In this document: positions 6,215 through 34,845 of the stretch, piece by piece
How the letters are laid out: every line of letters begins with the position of its first letter
How positions within the stretch are numbered: the stretch's first letter is position 1
IMG/VR virus record: IMGVR_UViG_3300027770_000026
Span: 62,001-126,000 of that record
Direction: 5' to 3' (one strand)
Length of the DNA: 64,000 bases
Translations under genes and position numbers: made by a program
Notes under the pieces: generated by a model
The model's input: only the letters and a program-made list of their open reading frames with translations
Databases searched by the model: none
Told to the model about the DNA's origin: nothing

Positions 6215-6451
6215 TTAGATCTTACCGTTAGAGATGAACTCGTTGAGGCGCGAAGCCTTAACAATTACATCTTCTTCAGTAAAGTACTGGGGGAACTCTG
6301 GGGTATCGGGCAATGCCTTTTGATTGTGCATTGCTGATTGAACCTGATTGTTCCAGTCTGTCTCAACAAATCCACGCTTGCTGTGGTATTCGTCGTTGAG
6401 CATGTCCTTTGCGAGCCGTACTAGCTCTAGTCTAATTTCAAATGGTGTCAT
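6215..6451 (-). CDS. conserved small myophage protein (PFEIRLEL family)
   Basis: MTPFEIRLELVRLAKDML...; AAGGAG SD preceded by a CA-rich tract and a GCAGGA/TCCTGC hairpin. Confidence 0.85.
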   Translation of the reverse strand: MTPFEIRLELVRLAKDMLNDEYHSKRGFVETDWNNQVQSAMHNQKALPDTPEFPQYFTEEDVIVKASRLNEFISNGKI

Positions 6452-6539
6452 CTTCGTCTCCTTGTGTGTATGTGTGTACGCAGGATCGTTCCTGCAATTG
6501 TATATAGCAGATAGTTGTACTATTCATATAAATATTGGT

Positions 6540-8681
6540 ATGAAAATACATGATATACTCACCGAAGCACAGCGTTTTGACTTCGACAAACACCGTGATA
6601 CTATTCTGCGTTTTGTGCAAAATACGCTGGCCGGCAAGCCCAATAACAGACAATTCAATCCCTTTTATGAACTGATTGTGGGTGGCGGGCAAGTGGGTGC
6701 CGCAAACAAATTGGGTATTGATCCCAAGATGGCAGCAACATGGAAACAGTACTTCCAAAGCAAGCCCTTCCTAGGTGGAGCCGGTGAACCTTGGAGTCAG
6801 GTTAACATTGGTGATCAGTACGCTAAGGCCACAGGCGATGACCGAACCCTGAACTTTTATGTTACTGTAAGCAAAGACAAGGACAATATAATGAAGTTCT
6901 TTAGGAACTATCACAGCCTTGCTAGCTACTTACAGCCCATAAGTCAACAGAACCAAACGCCTATCAAGTTTAAAACACACAGTATATTAGACAGCTTTAT
7001 TGGGCACAACGACAGTTTCAAGGTCTACTACTACGATCCTAAACTACGGAACCAAATAGTTGCTGCTGTTAAGAAATGGCTCAGTGACAGTGGTGTAAGC
7101 ACTGCTGCAAGATCACACGAACACGGCGTGGACGTAAAGAGTAATGGTGGTAGCTTTGGACAGTTACTAAGCAATCACGTATACGACGAGTTCACCAAAC
7201 TGATAAAAACAAACGGCGCTAAGGTTACTCCTGAACAGTACTTTGACTGGCTTAAGAAGAATCTCCCTGTGTTAATAGCACAGGTAAAGCCTAAGGAGCA
7301 AATGACAGAATCCTGGAGCAAGGGCTACAAGAAGAGCATTGATTGCTCAAATCCAAAAGGGTTTGGTATGAGAGCCAGCGAATTTATAACTGAAACACCA
7401 CTTGATCCTAGCACATCAAGTAAAATACTAGCTATGGCAACACGGCAAAAATACCAACTGCTGGGACAAGGCGCTGATGCTACTGTATTTGGTAGCTCTA
7501 CTCACCGTCCAAAAACGGTAGTTAAGATAACGTCGGGCGAACTATACACATCTGCAAAAAAAGCCAGCATAGGTTTCGACCACTTTTACGAGTTTTGCCA
7601 ACAGCACCCCGATAGCCCCTACCTGCCAAAGTTTGAGGAACGGGGATTCTTTGAAGTAAACAGGGAAAAGATTCCTTGGGTGCGTATGGAGCGTTTGAAC
7701 GAACATCCACAGGATTTGCATATCTATGCTGCTGTAGATACGCTAATAGAGGAATCATTTAAAAACGAATTTGCTGATTGGAAACTTGTGAAGTCTCTGC
7801 ATCCAAAATTGACCCTACAACAGCTGGGGATGCTTAAGAAATTTTACTCCATGCTCTCGGAACTAACAGACTACTTTTGGAAAAAAAGATCCAAATTGAA
7901 GTGGGATCTAGGAAAACGTAATATTATGTACCGTAGTAACGTTCCTGTTATCACAGATCCGTTCATGGCTAAAGAGCGAGAAGAATATGAAGAATCCTGG
8001 AGTAAGAGCTACAAGAAGAGCATTGATTGCTCAAATCCAAAAGGGTTTAGTCAACGTGCTCACTGTGCGGGACGCAAAGCACGACGTGCGGGCAAGAAGA
8101 CCAAAAGCGGTAGCGTAAGTGAAGAAGGAGAACTACTTTGGTCGTCAATGAATGAAGCTAGAGCCAATAGTGTGGAAGATTACAAGCCCACTGACCAACA
8201 ATTAGATGACCTAAAAAGCAAGTATCTTCCCAATTGGGAAATGTCAGATCATAAAATGTTACAGGCACGCTACATAGCCAAAGATCATCGACGTGCTGAA
8301 AAATTTATCAGGTTCATAAACCAAGTATCCGAACGTATGGATCACTTTGCCAAAGTAACTCAGGATGTATCCGAAGTCACTGTGGAAACAACTACCTTTG
8401 ATGTAAAAGGTCTGACTATTTTGGACTTCCAGTTGGCCTCGGCCATAGACAAATATGCAGAAAGAAATCAAATTGAACAGGCGAGGTCAGGCGGTAATTT
8501 TGAAATGTATGAAAACTTTGCAGATGGCGAGAAGCCTGGTCGCAAAGGACTAGCCAAACGTTCAGGTGTTGACTGTAAGCAAAGTGTGAGTAAATTGCGT
8601 AGTGTTGCTAAGAATAGCACAGGTGAAAAGCAGCGTATAGCACATTGGTGTGCCAATATGAAATCAGGGAAGAAAAAATAA
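6540..8681 (+). CDS. capsid-targeted polyprotein: HopA1-like domain, Ser/Thr kinase-like domain, pterin-carbinolamine-dehydratase-like domain and Cys/basic peptide modules
   Basis: TATAAATA at 6527-6534 then ATG 6540 (MKIHDILTE); kinase LGQGADATVF/VVKI/DLGKRNIM/TDP; PCD-like LPNW...MDHF...GLTILDFQLA; modules separated by xxE sites. Confidence 0.8.
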   Translation: MKIHDILTEAQRFDFDKHRDTILRFVQNTLAGKPNNRQFNPFYELIVGGGQVGAANKLGIDPKMAATWKQYFQSKPFLGGAGEPWSQVNIGDQYAKATGDDRTLNFYVTVSKDKDNIMKFFRNYHSLASYLQPISQQNQTPIKFKTHSILDSFIGHNDSFKVYYYDPKLRNQIVAAVKKWLSDSGVSTAARSHEHGVDVKSNGGSFGQLLSNHVYDEFTKLIKTNGAKVTPEQYFDWLKKNLPVLIAQVKPKEQMTESWSKGYKKSIDCSNPKGFGMRASEFITETPLDPSTSSKILAMATRQKYQLLGQGADATVFGSSTHRPKTVVKITSGELYTSAKKASIGFDHFYEFCQQHPDSPYLPKFEERGFFEVNREKIPWVRMERLNEHPQDLHIYAAVDTLIEESFKNEFADWKLVKSLHPKLTLQQLGMLKKFYSMLSELTDYFWKKRSKLKWDLGKRNIMYRSNVPVITDPFMAKEREEYEESWSKSYKKSIDCSNPKGFSQRAHCAGRKARRAGKKTKSGSVSEEGELLWSSMNEARANSVEDYKPTDQQLDDLKSKYLPNWEMSDHKMLQARYIAKDHRRAEKFIRFINQVSERMDHFAKVTQDVSEVTVETTTFDVKGLTILDFQLASAIDKYAERNQIEQARSGGNFEMYENFADGEKPGRKGLAKRSGVDCKQSVSKLRSVAKNSTGEKQRIAHWCANMKSGKKK
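7307..7364 (+). repeat. 58-bp direct repeat, copy 1
   Basis: 56/58 identical to 7991-8048; encodes ESWSKxYKKSIDCSNPKGF. Confidence 0.95.
7991..8048 (+). repeat. 58-bp direct repeat, copy 2
   Basis: 56/58 identical to 7307-7364. Confidence 0.95.
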
Positions 8682-8978
8682 GAGGGTTTTTCTGTTGCCA
8701 GGAAAACCCACAAACCCCGGTCTATTCCGCTATTAGGCGGCTAGTGCCATGTCGTAATTGCTATCGTTTGCAGTTACTGTTTTTGCGCTGATTAAGTCAG
8801 TCGCCTCACTGGTAGCCCTTAGTTTATTACTCACCCTGTCAAACCTGGTCGGCCCCAACAACAACACACTTCGTCCTGCAGTACATTCCTAATAGGTGTG
8901 ACACGGTCTGCAAATGTGCTGTTGGTGGAGCCGGGGGGAATCGCACCCCCGTCCAAGATGCCTTTAGTTAAGAGTTTA
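8682..8978 (-). ncRNA. ssrA: circularly permuted two-piece tmRNA
   Basis: Acceptor piece about 8978-8923 ends CGGCTCCACCA; self-pairing intervening segment 8922-8857; coding piece starts GGGGCCG at 8856 (G3.U70 pair); tag GCA(8771)..TAA(8733) = ANDSNYDMALAA; 3' CTG-GCAA-CAG hairpin; TATAAT at 8989-8984. Confidence 0.93.
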
Positions 8979-8996
8979 CTACCATTATACACTTAC

Positions 8997-9746
8997 TTAT
9001 AGTTTTTGATCATATGGTACTTCAATCCATCTACGATTATTCCACGTTGTATTGATAGTATGCACAACACCTTTCCTTATATCATGATAAAACAGTCTTG
9101 CTTGTGTTTGTGATGTGATGCTATCAACTAATGCCCAAAAACTGCTCGACACACAATGTATTTCTGTTGCGTTTCTGATCAGAGTAACCCACTTTAACAA
9201 GTTACCCTGATCTAGATCCAAAGTAACATAGATTATTTTGATATTAGGTAACCCGTTCACAACACGATATTGTTCAATGTCAATTGGAAAGCCATCTAGG
9301 TAATGACTGGATGATTTATGAATCAATACATATGGTTCTCCGGGGGTAACTAACGAACAGTACAGTTCATCCGAATCATCAATATGTTTTGGTAAACGAA
9401 AATTAGTATATCTCAAAGAGAAAGGCAAGTTATAAGAATCATAATATTGCTGAGAGAAATTAATTGGGATATGAATTCCGTTTATAACTGTGTAATTAAG
9501 CATCCTTCTCTTAATTTGAGAAAGTCCGCTATCTGATATGTATTGAGGTTCATAATTTGGGTGTACAGATACTACCTTAATATTAGGCCAATCTTGATAC
9601 AGACAACGAGTAGTTTCATAATAGCAAGGTTGAGTCGGAATATGTAATTCTCGACACCGATCGCCATAGTAATGAGCTATACCATTGTGAATAAAAGTAT
9701 CACCGAGGCTTTGATAACCTATAAAGAACAAACGATCAAATATCAC
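8997..9746 (-). CDS. glycosyltransferase-like protein, paralog 2
   Basis: SLGD..I.NG N-terminal motif and A.EIHCVSSSF C-terminal motif, GT-B (GT9/GT11-like) pattern; paralog of next gene. Confidence 0.6.
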   Translation of the reverse strand: MIFDRLFFIGYQSLGDTFIHNGIAHYYGDRCRELHIPTQPCYYETTRCLYQDWPNIKVVSVHPNYEPQYISDSGLSQIKRRMLNYTVINGIHIPINFSQQYYDSYNLPFSLRYTNFRLPKHIDDSDELYCSLVTPGEPYVLIHKSSSHYLDGFPIDIEQYRVVNGLPNIKIIYVTLDLDQGNLLKWVTLIRNATEIHCVSSSFWALVDSITSQTQARLFYHDIRKGVVHTINTTWNNRRWIEVPYDQKL

Positions 9747-9748
9747 TT

Positions 9749-10507
9749 TTATACTTTATCGTGATAATTTACAATATTCCAGCAACGACGATTCCATTCA
9801 CTGTTAACACGAGTAACAGAGAAAGCACGAATGTCATGAAAGAACAATTTTGCATTAGTTTGATTAAACATGCTATCTACTAATGCCCAAAAACTACTAG
9901 ATACACAATGTATTTCGCTAGCGTTCTTAATCAACTTAACCCAGCGAAGTAAGTTCCTACCATCCAAACTTTCGTCTACATGTATTACTTTAAGTTGTGG
10001 TAATCCGTTTATTTGTCTAAACCAATCAATATTGATAGATATACCATCCGGATGGTGTCCTGTTTTATTGTGTAATAAAATATAAGGCTCACCGCCCGAC
10101 AATTGATCATATAACTCGTCGCTACCATCTACATAGTTTGGTAAACGAAAGTTAGTATAACGCATGGAAAAAGGTATACTATAGTAGTCGTAGTATTGCA
10201 TGTCAAATGCAACTGGTATTAGCTGCCCGCTTAGATGCACCGAATAAACACTGTTTCTTAGAATGCGAGAAAGTTTATTCTCTGCAACATATTGATCTTC
10301 TCCCTGATTATGCGGCATCAGGGGAACTACAATGATATGGGGATGATCCTGATACAAAGTACGAATAGTATCGTAGTATTTAGGAAGACAAGGTATATGC
10401 AATTCGTCTGTCATATCACCGTAGTAATGTGCAACCCCATTCATTATAAACGCATCGCCAAGACTCATTGGTCCCGTAAAAAACAATCGATCAAAAATCT
10501 TAGTCAC
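9749..10507 (-). CDS. glycosyltransferase-like protein, paralog 1
   Basis: Same motifs; collinear with 8997-9746. Confidence 0.6.
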   Translation of the reverse strand: MTKIFDRLFFTGPMSLGDAFIMNGVAHYYGDMTDELHIPCLPKYYDTIRTLYQDHPHIIVVPLMPHNQGEDQYVAENKLSRILRNSVYSVHLSGQLIPVAFDMQYYDYYSIPFSMRYTNFRLPNYVDGSDELYDQLSGGEPYILLHNKTGHHPDGISINIDWFRQINGLPQLKVIHVDESLDGRNLLRWVKLIKNASEIHCVSSSFWALVDSMFNQTNAKLFFHDIRAFSVTRVNSEWNRRCWNIVNYHDKV

Positions 10508-10679
10508 AATCTTTCCTATTATCTTTCACGCCACAATGTGGACAATACCAGGTCTTAGGTTGCCACCCTGCATCCATTGTAGCAAAACTCCACCATAGAT
10601 AACAATGGTCACAACTAAAATGCCAAATTGTTTCTCTATAGGGAGTTAGCTTGATGTCATCGATCTCGATGGTACTCAT
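10500..10679 (-). CDS. small zinc-ribbon protein
   Basis: CDHC...CPHCG. Confidence 0.65.
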   Translation of the reverse strand: MSTIEIDDIKLTPYRETIWHFSCDHCYLWWSFATMDAGWQPKTWYCPHCGVKDNRKDCD

Positions 10680-10968
10680 ATTCGTCTGAGTCATTCCAAG
10701 CGTAGTCAAAGTCTGCCATGCAACGTTTCATATGGTGATAATATTGTGGATATCGGTATGGCGCACGTTCTTCACAGAAGCGTAGTGCCTTGCGATAGGG
10801 ATAGCGTTCGGGATAGTAACGTGGCTCACGTTCGCGTTCGTGATGTTTGCCAATATGGTAACCAATGACGCCACCGATGATTGCTGCTACGGCGTCATCT
10901 CCTGCAAATGCTGAATTTGGCACTGCTAGCCCTAAAACCATTGCGGAAACAAGTAGAATATTCTTCAT
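10657..10968 (-). CDS. secreted glycine-zipper-like protein
   Basis: Signal peptide ending AFA, then AAIIGGVIGY. Confidence 0.7.
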   Translation of the reverse strand: MKNILLVSAMVLGLAVPNSAFAGDDAVAAIIGGVIGYHIGKHHEREREPRYYPERYPYRKALRFCEERAPYRYPQYYHHMKRCMADFDYAWNDSDEYEYHRDR

Positions 10969-11002
10969 TTGAATGCCCTCATAAGATATTTAGTACAGCG
11001 TA

Positions 11003-11287
11003 CTAGTAGTCCCGTACTTTGTCATGACTAGCACCGCAGCGACCACAGTACCACCAACTCCAACCTAATCCATTGGTGTGGAACTTGGACTTGAGATGCT
11101 CACCATGTTCCTGTACACATTTTTCCTGTATCTCTTTAAGAGCAGGATAGTATACCGTGCGGTCATACTCCTCCATCAGCTCCTGCATCTTCTTCCTGCG
11201 GGCGTCCTGTATCCCCCAGTAAGTATCTGGTGGATCGTTTTTCATTTTGATTGCTCGCGCCATGCGAATGATGTCATCATGGTCCAT
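11003..11287 (-). CDS. hypothetical protein with Cys/His knuckle
   Basis: C...H....CGRCG. Confidence 0.6.
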   Translation of the reverse strand: MDHDDIIRMARAIKMKNDPPDTYWGIQDARRKKMQELMEEYDRTVYYPALKEIQEKCVQEHGEHLKSKFHTNGLGWSWWYCGRCGASHDKVRDY

Positions 11288-11582
11288 TGAATTCCTTTGG
11301 GTCTACAGGCAGTAGTGTTTCAACAGTACCCTCATGATATGCAAATGCGTCTAAGAATCGCTTAGGTGCACCAACTACACCCGCTAGTTGGTATGCTACT
11401 GCCAGCAGGTCGCGCAGGTGTTCATTCTCGTACTGTAGGCGACGGGCTTCGCGTTCGTGACAACTGCCTGTATGAAAGCCTGCACAGTCACAGTACTGTG
11501 GCGGTACACCTTCTTCATTCACGGCGGCTGCTACTTGTATTTTTTTGATTATCTGTAACAACGATGTTGTCTTCGTCATCAT
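11277..11582 (-). CDS. hypothetical protein
   Basis: ORF track; CDC...H...C. Confidence 0.55.
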   Translation of the reverse strand: MMTKTTSLLQIIKKIQVAAAVNEEGVPPQYCDCAGFHTGSCHEREARRLQYENEHLRDLLAVAYQLAGVVGAPKRFLDAFAYHEGTVETLLPVDPKEFNGP

Positions 11583-33593: not shown

Positions 33594-34757
33594 TTAGGCG
33601 TTCTCGACTTGTACGCTGGTGTTGAGTACAGCAGCAGTTAATTTCCAAGGAACTGTAACTCCGCTTGCAAACTCATATGCTGCACCATTAATAGCCTTGC
33701 GTGTCAATAGCGCACGGTGAGCTGTTAGTTTGGTTACATAATATTCGTTTGTGTCGCTGTCAACTGCAACAATAGTTGCTTCACCAGCAGCCGGACCTGC
33801 AGCTACTAGCTTGACTTGGCTTTGGCCTTGTGCAGTGTCTACTAGATAACGACGGCTTGCTTCCTGCTTGATGATATCACCAGCTACTGCTGAACTTCCG
33901 CCAACGACCCATGCAGTGATCTTGATAGCATTTGCCTTAGTTGAAGTTAGTGTGATAGTCTGTAGTGTTACGCTTTGTGTAACGCTTGAACTTGGAGCAG
34001 TATAATAACCTGCACCAGCAGTTGTGATCACTACTGACTTAGCACGATATGTTGGCGTAATTGTTAGACCAGCACCGTATGTATCACATACAGCAGCTTG
34101 TGCACCTGTTACTAGTGCTTCAAATTCGCCACGGTTAACTGGGGTCAGTGCCGTGACTGTGCCGTATGTTACACCGCGTGTGAATGTTGCACCTGTTACA
34201 GTTGAACCACCAATTGCTAGTGGACTGGTTGCAGCTACTGCATCAGCATAGGTAGCATACAGTGTTGCAGCAGTTGCTGTTGTTGGTGCTCCAACGTAGT
34301 AAATCTGTCCGCCAGCAATAGTTGTACCACCAATGGTCAAGTTACCAGTAACTGTTCCAGTAATGTGAATACTGGTACCAGAAATCATTGCAGTTGTAGT
34401 GGTGGTGAAGCTGATCTGAGTGTTAGCAGAGTTAGCTATGCTTGATAGTGCGCTGGATGTTACAGTTGCAGTGTATGTTGATGTTGTTGTACCACCAACA
34501 AAACTGATTGCACCTGCTGTAATAGGATAAGCACGAGTCTGTGTGCCACCAATCGCAACACTTAACACTTCTGATGTGATAGTACCTAGTGCTAGTACAC
34601 CACCTGACGCTACTGGAACGTCAGGGTTACCAAATGTGATCAACGGACGAGTGGTGTATGAACCTGCAGCATTAACTGCTGCGCTTGCTACACCTTCACC
34701 ACCTACTGGTGGGCTGTTTGTATTACCAAAATATTTCTTATGAATCGGGCGTCCCAT
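33594..34757 (-). CDS. virion structural protein (Thr/Ala/Gly-rich)
   Basis: MGRPIHKKYFG start, beta-rich, IIKQEASRRYLV; own late promoter and terminator. Confidence 0.75.
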   Translation of the reverse strand: MGRPIHKKYFGNTNSPPVGGEGVASAAVNAAGSYTTRPLITFGNPDVPVASGGVLALGTITSEVLSVAIGGTQTRAYPITAGAISFVGGTTTSTYTATVTSSALSSIANSANTQISFTTTTTAMISGTSIHITGTVTGNLTIGGTTIAGGQIYYVGAPTTATAATLYATYADAVAATSPLAIGGSTVTGATFTRGVTYGTVTALTPVNRGEFEALVTGAQAAVCDTYGAGLTITPTYRAKSVVITTAGAGYYTAPSSSVTQSVTLQTITLTSTKANAIKITAWVVGGSSAVAGDIIKQEASRRYLVDTAQGQSQVKLVAAGPAAGEATIVAVDSDTNEYYVTKLTAHRALLTRKAINGAAYEFASGVTVPWKLTAAVLNTSVQVENA

Positions 34758-34845
34758 TTTGTTTCTCCTTAAGTGAGTTAAAGTCGTTCTAGGACTTACG
34801 CGGTGGGGACCGCATAACTCTGTTATTGAACAGACAATGTATTTA
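34758..34845 (-). promoter_or_regulatory. late promoter and three-hairpin 5' leader
   Basis: TAAATA 34845-34840; hairpins TCTGTT/AACAGA, TATGCGGT/ACCGCGTA, AGTC/GACT; AAGGAG. Confidence 0.55.

What the first reader, a model, noticed from the sequence alone, without database searches (positions are those of the whole stretch)
8682..8989. Phage-encoded circularly permuted two-piece tmRNA
Seen: order is acceptor piece (..CCACCA), self-pairing spacer, then GGGGCCG coding piece, with a G3.U70 pair, non-canonical T-loop (TGCGATT), tag ANDSNYDMALAA and its own TATAAT. Known: permuted tmRNAs occur in alphaproteobacteria and some betaproteobacteria and cyanobacteria. Inference: proteobacterial host. 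No smpB is in the window, so it probably uses the host protein.
Basis: partly seen in the sequence, partly recalled or inferred. Interest (0 to 1): 0.68.

Follow-up and report, generated by a model that had tools for sequence, protein, structure and literature searches.

The report
Jumbo phage carries permuted tmRNA gene
A large freshwater phage carries a complete, circularly permuted (two-piece) tmRNA gene, the RNA that rescues stalled ribosomes; the call is correct, but such genes are already known from dozens of phages.

Summary
On the minus strand, window 8983-8733 (with tail to about 8673), lies a complete permuted tmRNA gene. ARAGORN calls it permuted with tag ANDSNYDMALAA plus two stops. 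Rfam tmRNA_permuted scores 142 bits and beta_tmRNA 124.5 bits. The G3.U70 pair, encoded CCA, UGCGAUU T-loop and 66-nt spacer are all present.

The window is part of a 265,892-bp IMG/VR virus record. It carries 22 tRNAs and a TerL 55% identical to Pseudomonas jumbo phage PA5oct. No integrase and no SmpB were found in the record.

- The TATAAT abuts the first paired base of the RNA, has no -35 element, and is not conserved in relatives, so it is probably not the promoter.
- The T-loop is not a one-off. At least 106 virus-borne permuted tmRNAs share it, including one in cultured Caulobacter phage CcrRogue, while 0 of 401 sampled Pseudomonadota genomes do.

The ends of the spacer form a 10-bp helix that covaries across relatives. 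Even so, a relative about 94% identical in both pieces has only a 4-nt spacer.

Phage two-piece tmRNAs are published (53 unique ones among isolates by 2021), so this is a new member of a known kind. Expression and processing could not be tested because no RNA runs hold it. The host is probably a freshwater proteobacterium. The tag resembles those of Nevskia and Sinobacteraceae genomes.

The parts
8984..8989 (-). TATAAT hexamer, probably not the tmRNA promoter
   Evidence: Read from sequence. It lies 7 nt after the stop codon (8999-8997) of ORF 8997-9746(-) and abuts the first paired base, 8983. The consensus scan finds no -35 partner. Relatives have ATTAAT, ACTAAT, TTTAAT, GATAAT or GGTAAT here, so only TAAT is conserved. 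In bacterial homologues the -10 lies about 7 nt further upstream.
8923..8983 (-). Acceptor piece (61 nt). P2 outer strand GGUAG 8983-8979; P2 inner strand 8960-8954; T arm 8950-8934 with T-loop UGCGAUU 8945-8939; acceptor 3' strand CGGCUCC 8933-8927; ACCA 8926-8923
   Evidence: ARAGORN 3' tRNA domain. RF04321 alignment from model position 1. T arm and acceptor stem are 100% paired and P2 inner helix 98% paired across 40 viral genes, with compensatory changes.
8857..8922 (-). Intervening spacer (66 nt), expected to be removed. Its ends, 8922-8913 and 8870-8861, form a 10-bp helix that extends the acceptor stem
   Evidence: MFE fold. All 10 pairs show compensatory changes and 92.8% of cells are paired. 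Spacer length in close relatives is 4, 52, 63 or 81 nt. No Rfam match inside it.
8730..8856 (-). Coding piece, core part. Acceptor 5' strand GGGGCCG 8856-8850; D-loop analogue ACCAGGUUUGAC 8849-8838; P2 return strands 8838-8832 and CUACC 8815-8811; PK1 region about 8810-8784; resume codon GCA 8771-8769; tag ORF 8771-8736 (ANDSNYDMALAA); stops UAA UAG 8735-8730
   Evidence: ARAGORN 5' tRNA domain, resume consensus and tag. RF04321 and RF01850 alignments. RNAalifold pairs.
8673..8729 (-). 3' tail of the coding piece. Candidate pseudoknot: CCGGGG 8720-8715 pairs with UCCUGG 8703-8698, which sits in the loop of hairpin 8709-8684. A U-rich tract 8681-8673 follows, so the hairpin looks like a terminator
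   Evidence: RF01850 alignment of the conserved hairpin with loop UCCUnGnAACAGAA. MFE fold. The same motif appears in relatives. The pseudoknot pairing was read from the sequence and was not tested statistically. The terminator scan missed it because the loop exceeds 8 nt.

Best explanation
This is an intact, phage-borne, circularly permuted tmRNA (ssrA) gene of the beta-like type, carried by a freshwater jumbo myovirus.

Inferred mechanism, by homology with the Caulobacter two-piece tmRNA:
1. The gene is transcribed as one precursor: acceptor piece, spacer, coding piece. Transcription probably starts upstream of the TATAAT or runs through from the two upstream ORFs.
2. RNase P cuts 5' of G8856. 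The 3' end at the encoded CCA (8923) is trimmed, and the spacer is discarded.
3. The two pieces stay together through the acceptor stem and the long P2 helix.
4. Host AlaRS charges the RNA through G3.U70 and the A discriminator.
5. Host SmpB and EF-Tu deliver it to ribosomes stalled on broken mRNAs.
6. Translation resumes at GCA and adds ANDSNYDMALAA, whose ALAA end marks the product for host ClpXP-type proteolysis.

The likely benefit to the phage is free ribosomes during infection, when mRNA decay produces many non-stop messages. The 22 phage tRNA genes fit the same theme.

Shown here: the gene's identity, its intactness, its structure with covariation, its phage location, and the absence of smpB. 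Inferred: transcription, processing, charging, tagging and the benefit.
For: - Detection: ARAGORN permuted call and tag; RF04321 142 bits and RF01850 124.5 bits, both full length.
- Structure: G3.U70 invariant in 40 of 40 relatives; compensatory changes in 23 of 34 pairs; 90% of cells paired against 78% in shuffles (0 of 500 shuffles as high) and 43-57% when the partner is slid. RNAalifold gives 13 of 24 pairs with compensatory changes. The precursor fold has z = -2.6.
- Conservation: the gene is kept in related viral contigs (L091 93-94% identical, L150, L112/L099, L082, L108, L128). Three contigs (L091, L099, L112) have the tag identical, with acceptor-stem positions 5 and 6 covarying.
- Phage context: virus record of 265,892 bp; RNR, DnaB, helicase and tail genes; TerL 55% identical to PA5oct; 22 tRNAs.
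- Absences: no integrase; no SmpB in this record or in three complete relatives.
- Assembly: Logan contigs tile the locus at even depth.
- Precedent: phage two-piece tmRNAs are published (PMC9004378).
Against: - There is no expression or processing evidence. No RNA run holds the sequence, and the material laid on it is DNA contigs only.
- No credible promoter was identified.
- The T-loop has G where all tRNAs and most tmRNAs have U55. The D-loop analogue reads GGUUU-GAC instead of GGUUUCGAC. The effect on folding, charging or SmpB binding is unknown.
- The record is only about 80% complete, so an smpB gene in the missing part cannot be excluded.
Confidence: 0.8

Rival explanations
1. The RNA is made, but it acts mainly against the host rather than as a rescue factor. 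It might compete with the host tmRNA for SmpB, or direct tagging in a way that favours the phage, for example by recycling host proteins.
For: A tRNA-like-domain-only tmRNA of mycobacteriophage DS6A resembles a molecule shown to inhibit tmRNA (PMC4131195, PMC11915505). Buchholz et al. propose selective tagging of host proteins (PMC9004378). The phage has no smpB, so it must draw on the host pool. The virus-associated G55 T-loop could change interactions.
Against: The tag ORF, the resume context and the ALAA end are intact and conserved among relatives. A pure decoy would not need them. tmRNA has no known way to choose host over phage proteins.
Confidence: 0.12
2. The gene is a passenger or decaying copy picked up from a host, or an att-site remnant, with no function in the phage.
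For: Temperate elements often integrate into ssrA and carry fragments of it (PMC4131195, PMC9004378). The T-loop and D-loop analogue depart from the consensus.
Against: The gene is complete rather than a 3' fragment. No integrase is found in 266 kb. The same departures occur in at least 106 viral genes and are kept with compensatory changes elsewhere. Three contigs carry the identical tag, and in two of them the mature pieces were compared and are 78-94% identical to the window's. In 401 sampled Gammaproteobacteria only 33-42 nt of the T arm and acceptor region (query 33-79) match, plus two short isolated matches elsewhere.
Confidence: 0.05
3. The locus is an assembly chimera, or bacterial DNA binned as viral.
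For: tmRNA T-arm sequences from many organisms pile up on 8923-8958 in the metagenomes (loose ends and the depth spike).
Against: Logan contigs of the source run bridge both flanks with no differences at the same depth (16.5-20) as the phage genes. A second sample holds 8579-8924 identically. Related viral contigs carry the same gene next to homologous phage genes.
Confidence: 0.01

Closest known systems
Uncultured viral contigs L091 (IMGVR_UViG_3300032330_000886), L150, L112/L099 and L082 (326,658-bp contig)
   Same: Same clade. They share the UGCGAUU T-loop, the UAAUGGUAGUAAAC start and the core GGCUACCAGUGAGGCGACUGACUUAAUCAGCGCAAAA. L091, L099 and L112 carry the identical tag. L091 is 93-94% identical in both mature pieces. 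L082 also carries homologues of the neighbouring genes.
   Different: Spacer length is 4 nt (L091, L112), 52 nt (L150) or 81 nt (L082) against 66 nt here. The D-loop analogue reads AGUUUCGAC there and AGGUUUGAC here. Gene order around the tmRNA differs in L082.
ssrA of Stenotrophomonas Menderavirus phages (Mendera, Moby, IME-SM1, vB_SmaM_Bhz51)
   Same: A beta-type permuted tmRNA in a cultured large myovirus. It is about 70% identical over 192 nt, is annotated as ssrA in some records, and sits among tRNA genes. The IME-SM1-length viral record L004 (159,514 bp) has no SmpB.
   Different: Canonical UUCGAUU T-loop, tag VAANDDSYTVRIAA, lower model scores (118 and 92 bits), and a 160-kb genome.
Two-piece tmRNA of OM43 phage Melnitz and pelagimyophages (Buchholz et al. 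2022, PMC9004378)
   Same: A published phage-encoded permuted tmRNA without a phage smpB. That paper counts 53 two-piece forms among 133 unique phage tmRNAs, mostly aquatic.
   Different: Alpha-type and linked to a glutamine riboswitch. No riboswitch or other Rfam element is found here.
Betaproteobacterial two-piece tmRNA (Rfam RF01850; Sharkady and Williams 2004, cited from PMC11915505 and PMC9004378)
   Same: Same gene order and helices, and the conserved 3' hairpin with a UCCU...AACAGAA loop. The score is above the family threshold.
   Different: Viral rather than chromosomal. G55 T-loop. A 12-residue tag. An insertion relative to the model's promoter region.
Caulobacter two-piece tmRNA (Keiler, Shapiro and Williams 2000, cited from PMC9004378)
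   Same: The experimentally shown model for processing a permuted precursor into two base-paired RNAs that tag proteins.
   Different: Alpha-type, cellular and encoded with its own smpB. No experiment exists for the RNA in this window.
Permuted tmRNA genes of Sinobacteraceae and Nevskia genomes (G001, G002 and relatives)
   Same: A 12-residue tag of the same build (ANDSVYDVALAA, ANDDNFEVALAA), G at T-loop position 55, and freshwater origin.
   Different: T-loop GGCRGUA, spacers of 4-5 nt, best Rfam subtype alpha, high G+C, and no extended nucleotide similarity.

Membership tests
tmRNA (ssrA) | tRNA-like domain: 7-bp acceptor stem with G3.U70, discriminator A plus CCA, and a T arm | tested here: met
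   GGGGCCG pairs with CGGCUCC, with G3.U70, followed by ACCA. The 5-bp T stem is present. All pairs are kept in 40 of 40 relatives. The T-loop has G in place of U55.
tmRNA (ssrA) | mRNA-like domain: resume codon in the conserved context, and a short tag ORF ending in hydrophobic residues plus a stop | tested here: met
   ARAGORN resume consensus agtaactgcaaacgatag. Tag ANDSNYDMALAA followed by UAA UAG.
tmRNA (ssrA) | Alanylation, SmpB and EF-Tu binding, and tagging of stalled products | not testable with these tools
   This needs biochemistry or proteomics. No RNA runs hold the locus.
Permuted (two-piece) tmRNA, Rfam RF04321 | Gene order of acceptor piece, intervening segment, then coding piece, with a score above the gathering threshold | tested here: met
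   142.1 bits against a gathering score of 47, model positions 1-213. ARAGORN reports 'Permuted'.
Permuted (two-piece) tmRNA, Rfam RF04321 | The precursor is cleaved into two RNAs held together by base pairing | not testable with these tools
   Only DNA contigs could be laid on the locus. The helices that would hold the pieces together are present and covary.
beta_tmRNA subtype, Rfam RF01850 | Score above the family threshold over the full model, including the 3' hairpins | tested here: met
   124.5 bits against a gathering score of 84, model positions 1-331. It was the only clan CL00001 model kept after overlap resolution. The last model hairpin is poorly matched.
beta_tmRNA subtype, Rfam RF01850 | Encoded on a betaproteobacterial chromosome | tested here: not met
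   The record is a virus record. It works like and resembles the beta type, but it belongs to a virus-borne clade.
Phage-encoded tmRNA | The gene lies inside a phage genome and not at a prophage-host junction | tested here: met
   The gene sits about 70.7 kb into a 265.9-kb virus record, flanked by phage genes on both sides. No integrase is found. Contigs bridge both flanks.

The most novel reading that the evidence does not exclude
The window's gene belongs to a virus-borne lineage of permuted tmRNAs marked by a U55-to-G T-loop (UGCGAUU). Among beta-like forms this goes with a D-loop analogue one base shorter.

The mark is found in at least 106 IMG/VR genes of both alpha-like and beta-like build, and in cultured Caulobacter phage CcrRogue. 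It was not found in 401 sampled Pseudomonadota genomes, whereas the canonical loop was found in 38 of 121.

If this is a phage-specific adaptation and not a sampling effect, phage tmRNAs have evolved as a distinct class. The adaptation might be independence from host U55 pseudouridylation, altered SmpB or EF-Tu handling, or a way to tell the phage tmRNA from the host's. In that case they are not simply borrowed host genes.
Probability: 0.3. Interest if true: 0.55.

Novelty: new member of a known kind. Interest (0 to 1): 0.33.

Why it matters
The gene adds a jumbo freshwater phage to the list of phages that bring their own ribosome-rescue RNA and rely on the host's SmpB. On its own that is ordinary annotation.

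Three by-products may be more useful:
- The G55 T-loop appears enriched in viral permuted tmRNAs.
- There is clean covariation evidence for a spacer-end helix in the precursor, yet near-identical genes have reduced the spacer to 4 nt.
- The tag peptide points to Nevskia and Sinobacteraceae-like bacteria as possible hosts. This suggests tags could serve as a host-prediction signal.

Tried and rejected
- **RNA evidence.** The look-up of sequencing runs returned only DNA runs, 16 in all, nearly all labelled as freshwater, lake or drinking-water metagenomes. Read laying therefore says nothing about transcript ends.
- **Promoter.** The sigma-70 scan finds no minus-strand promoter. The alternative TATGAT at 9014-9009, which cmscan aligned to the model's -10, lacks a -35 at proper spacing. 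It was read by eye only.
- **Terminator scan.** It reports only a chance plus-strand site inside the tag region.
- **Close bacterial relative.** BLAST against 401 Gammaproteobacteria matched only 33-42 nt of the T arm and acceptor region, plus two short isolated matches. One of those genomes, G042, is flagged unpublished. No claim here rests on it beyond its being one of the 401 sampled.
- **Weak SmpB hit in L082's record.** It is an SPFH/Band 7 protein and is spurious.
- **Sharkady and Williams 2004.** The paper could not be read because it is not held.
- **Supplements of the 2025 tmRNA database paper.** They hold nothing on phages or Nevskiales.
- **P2 outer helix (GGUAG/CUACC).** It is poorly aligned in A1, with 50% of cells paired. 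Its covariation was judged by eye from A2.
- **Not used.** Protein structure, complex and large protein searches, because the feature is an RNA.

Full report
**1. The observation**

ARAGORN reports one permuted tmRNA at 8642-9015(-) with tag ANDSNYDMALAA and two stop codons. It places the 3' tRNA domain before the 5' tRNA domain, 66 nt apart.

Rfam 15 gives tmRNA_permuted (RF04321) at 142.1 bits over 8983-8733 and beta_tmRNA (RF01850) at 124.5 bits over 9038-8659. Both are full length and above their gathering scores. A permissive search of 8600-9100 finds nothing else.

**2. Anatomy in window coordinates, minus strand**

- Acceptor piece, 8983-8923:
  - P2 outer strand GGUAG, 8983-8979.
  - P2 inner strand, 8960-8954.
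  - T arm 8950-8934, with T-loop UGCGAUU at 8945-8939.
  - Acceptor 3' strand CGGCUCC, 8933-8927.
  - ACCA, 8926-8923.
- Spacer, 8922-8857.
- Coding piece, from G8856:
  - Acceptor 5' strand GGGGCCG, with G3 (8854) opposite U (8929).
  - D-loop analogue ACCAGGUUUGAC.
  - P2 return strands, with CUACC at 8815-8811.
  - PK1 region.
  - Resume codon GCA, 8771-8769.
  - Tag ORF to 8736, then UAA UAG at 8735-8730.
- 3' tail:
  - CCGGGG (8720-8715) can pair with UCCUGG (8703-8698).
  - UCCUGG lies in the loop of hairpin 8709-8684.
  - UUAUUUUUU (8681-8673) follows the hairpin.
  - This looks like a pseudoknot that also serves as a terminator. The pairing was read from the sequence. The hairpin itself is the conserved one of the beta model.

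The whole precursor folds into this architecture on its own, with MFE -103 kcal/mol and z = -2.6.

**3. Is it in a phage?**

The window is bases 62001-126000 of a 265,892-bp IMG/VR virus record, rated linear and about 80% complete.
- The record has 22 tRNA genes at 33-62 kb on the same strand as the tmRNA.
- It carries ribonucleotide reductase, a DnaB-like helicase, another helicase and a tail-spike-like protein.
- Its large terminase is 55% identical to that of Pseudomonas jumbo phage PA5oct and 51-52% identical to those of Sinorhizobium and Agrobacterium jumbo phages.
- It has no tyrosine integrase.

Logan contigs of the source run tile 6501-11500 without differences at depth 16.5-20. A second freshwater sample holds 8579-8772 and 8743-8924 identically. 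The gene is therefore not a chimera and not a prophage junction.

**4. Relatives and structure**

A pattern scan of IMG/VR found 49 contigs with beta-like permuted tmRNAs. ARAGORN of these permuted.

The window's closest kin share the same start and core and the UGCGAUU loop:

| Locus | Acceptor / coding piece identity | Tag |
|---|---|---|
| L091 | 93.4% / 94.5% | identical |
| L150 | 93.4% / 88.2% | ANDSNYEMRIAA |
| L082 (326.7-kb contig) | 88.5% / 78.7% | ANDDVYAMELAA |
| L112 | 77.8% / 84.3% | identical |
| L128 | 83.6% / 78.6% | AANDARYDYALAA |
| L108 | 83.6% / 77.3% | ANDSVYSVAA |

L099 carries the same gene sequence as L112, read by eye. It lies at the end of its locus and was not scored.

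L082 also carries homologues of the two ORFs next to the tmRNA.

Counting pairs on 40 viral genes for a structure I named gives 90.1% of cells paired against 77.7% in shuffles (0 of 500 as high) and 43-57% when partners are slid. Compensatory changes occur in 23 of 34 pairs. The acceptor stem and T arm are 100% paired, G3.U70 is invariant, and the P2 inner helix is 98% paired. RNAalifold recovers the same core on its own.

**5. The spacer**

The first and last 10 nt of the spacer form a helix that stacks on the acceptor stem. All 10 pairs show compensatory changes and 92.8% of cells are paired. The window reads ACAGCACAUU against AGUGUGUUGU.

L091 and L112 nevertheless have only 4 nt between CCA and GGGG. 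The spacer and its helix are therefore dispensable for the mature RNA. They more likely serve precursor folding or processing.

**6. The TATAAT**

The hexamer is perfect, but four points argue against a promoter role.
- It ends at 8984, directly against the first paired base. A start 5-9 nt downstream would delete the GGUAG strand of P2.
- It has no -35 partner.
- Relatives keep only TAAT.
- In bacterial homologues with recognisable TTGAAA-17-TACGAT promoters, the -10 lies about 7 nt further upstream, and the transcript would start where the window's hexamer ends.

The stop codon of ORF 8997-9746 is only 7 nt upstream. Read-through with 5' processing, or a phage-specific promoter, is therefore more likely. 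This remains open.

**7. The T-loop**

G at position 55 is real in the reads of the source sample. It is not a one-off.
- It occurs in at least 106 viral permuted genes, both beta-type and alpha-type.
- It also occurs in an unannotated permuted tmRNA of cultured Caulobacter phage CcrRogue.
- The same pattern was found in 0 of 401 sampled Pseudomonadota genomes. The canonical loop was found in 38 of 121.
- All 46 parsed viral genes from the first scan, which left positions 54 and 55 free, had UUCGAUU.
- Among beta-like genes, U55 goes with NNNNGGUUUC before GAC, and G55 goes with a stretch one base shorter. The window fits the shorter class.

This is an association and not a proven structural link. 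The bacterial sample is small.

**8. SmpB and host**

No SmpB domain is found in six-frame searches of this record. None is found in five related records, three of them complete with terminal repeats. The one weak hit is an SPFH protein.

For the host, the tmRNA type alone is weak evidence. Stenotrophomonas phages carry a beta-type permuted gene, and phage Melnitz carries an alpha-type gene in a non-alpha host (PMC9004378).

The tag is more telling. A degenerate pattern for A-N-D-[S/T..]-x-Y-D-x-A-L-A-A hit only four of the species genomes. About 0.03 hits are expected by chance, by my own estimate from the pattern's information content. Three of the four are permuted tmRNAs in a Sinobacteraceae MAG, a Nevskia MAG and a MAG labelled Rhodospirillales, all with tag ANDSVYDVALAA.

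These genomes have no standard tmRNA above threshold. In their order, 6 of 61 genomes carry such genes, with tags ANDDNFEVALAA or ANEDNFEVALAA, spacers of 4-5 nt and T-loop GGCRGUA.

I rate a host from this freshwater gammaproteobacterial group as a lead, at about 0.3. The phage's 43.5% G+C speaks against it, because the tmRNA loci of those bacteria are about 58% G+C.

**9. What is known**

Permuted tmRNA genes are established in three bacterial groups, and RF04321 merges their models (PMC11915505). Phage tmRNAs have been listed since the mycobacteriophage and Bacillus phage G cases (PMC4131195). The 2025 database holds 79 phage sequences (PMC11915505). Buchholz et al. counted 133 unique tmRNAs in 402 phage genomes, 53 of them two-piece and 50 of those aquatic (PMC9004378). 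The finding is therefore a new member of a known kind.

**10. Verdict**

- The identification is correct, confidence about 0.97.
- Function in ribosome rescue with host SmpB is the best explanation, about 0.8 including variants of purpose.
- The promoter claim is not supported.
- The host inference is plausible on other grounds.
- Interest is modest. The side observations on the T-loop, the spacer and the tag are what might merit follow-up.

Noticed in passing
window 34755-34834 (-): A freshwater-2 RNA motif (RF02980, 64.7 bits against a gathering score of 49.9) ends in a Shine-Dalgarno sequence and the ATG of ORF 33594-34757(-). That ORF encodes a 387-aa protein with no PHROG match.
   Followed up: no
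IMG/VR loci L052-L171; L225 (Caulobacter phage CcrRogue JX100814, about 102.55-102.87 kb): The UGCGAUU T-loop (G in place of U55) is shared by at least 106 virus-borne permuted tmRNAs of alpha-like and beta-like build. It also occurs in an unannotated permuted tmRNA of cultured phage CcrRogue (tag AANDNAPFAVREAIAA), which ARAGORN misses. It was not found in 401 sampled Pseudomonadota genomes.
   Followed up: partly
L177-L179 and L195-L199 (bacterial genomes G001-G003, G810, G256, G793, G816, G834): A gammaproteobacterial group (Sinobacteraceae and Nevskia MAGs and relatives; 6 of 61 genomes of the order) has only a permuted tmRNA. It has T-loop GGCRGUA, a 4-5-nt spacer and 12-residue tags. ARAGORN does not call these genes on L177-L179; the five others were identified by RF04321 and not run through ARAGORN.
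   Followed up: partly
L091:2955-3266(-), L112:387-697(+): Genes about 94% (L091) and about 80% (L112) identical to the window's tmRNA have only 4 nt between CCA and GGGG. The long spacer is therefore an indel-prone, dispensable part.
   Followed up: yes
L150:7339-7374 (+): The 52-nt spacer of a closely related viral tmRNA gene matches the abiF RNA motif (RF03085, 41.5 bits against a gathering score of 37).
   Followed up: no
window 8997-9746 (-) and 9749-10507 (-): Two tandem ORFs of 249 and 252 aa lie directly upstream of the tmRNA on the same strand. They have no Pfam match. Both hit the same single gene in L082 at 47-49% identity, so they are probably paralogues.
   Followed up: partly
window 6348-8681 (+): A 777-aa ORF converges on the tmRNA and has a C-terminal pterin-4a-carbinolamine dehydratase domain (PF01329, residues 615-702). 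Its last 59 residues are 90% identical in L082. Its final codons overlap the U-tract of the tmRNA's terminator-like hairpin.
   Followed up: no
G000:C1:33072-61949 (upstream of the window): A cluster of 22 tRNA genes lies on the same strand as the tmRNA, including two tRNA-Met.
   Followed up: no
L226 (Pseudomonas phage PaMx31 JQ067090, about 78.15-78.58 kb): An unannotated permuted tmRNA with a canonical T-loop and tag ANDTSFDVRLAA lies in a 93-kb Pseudomonas siphovirus record.
   Followed up: no
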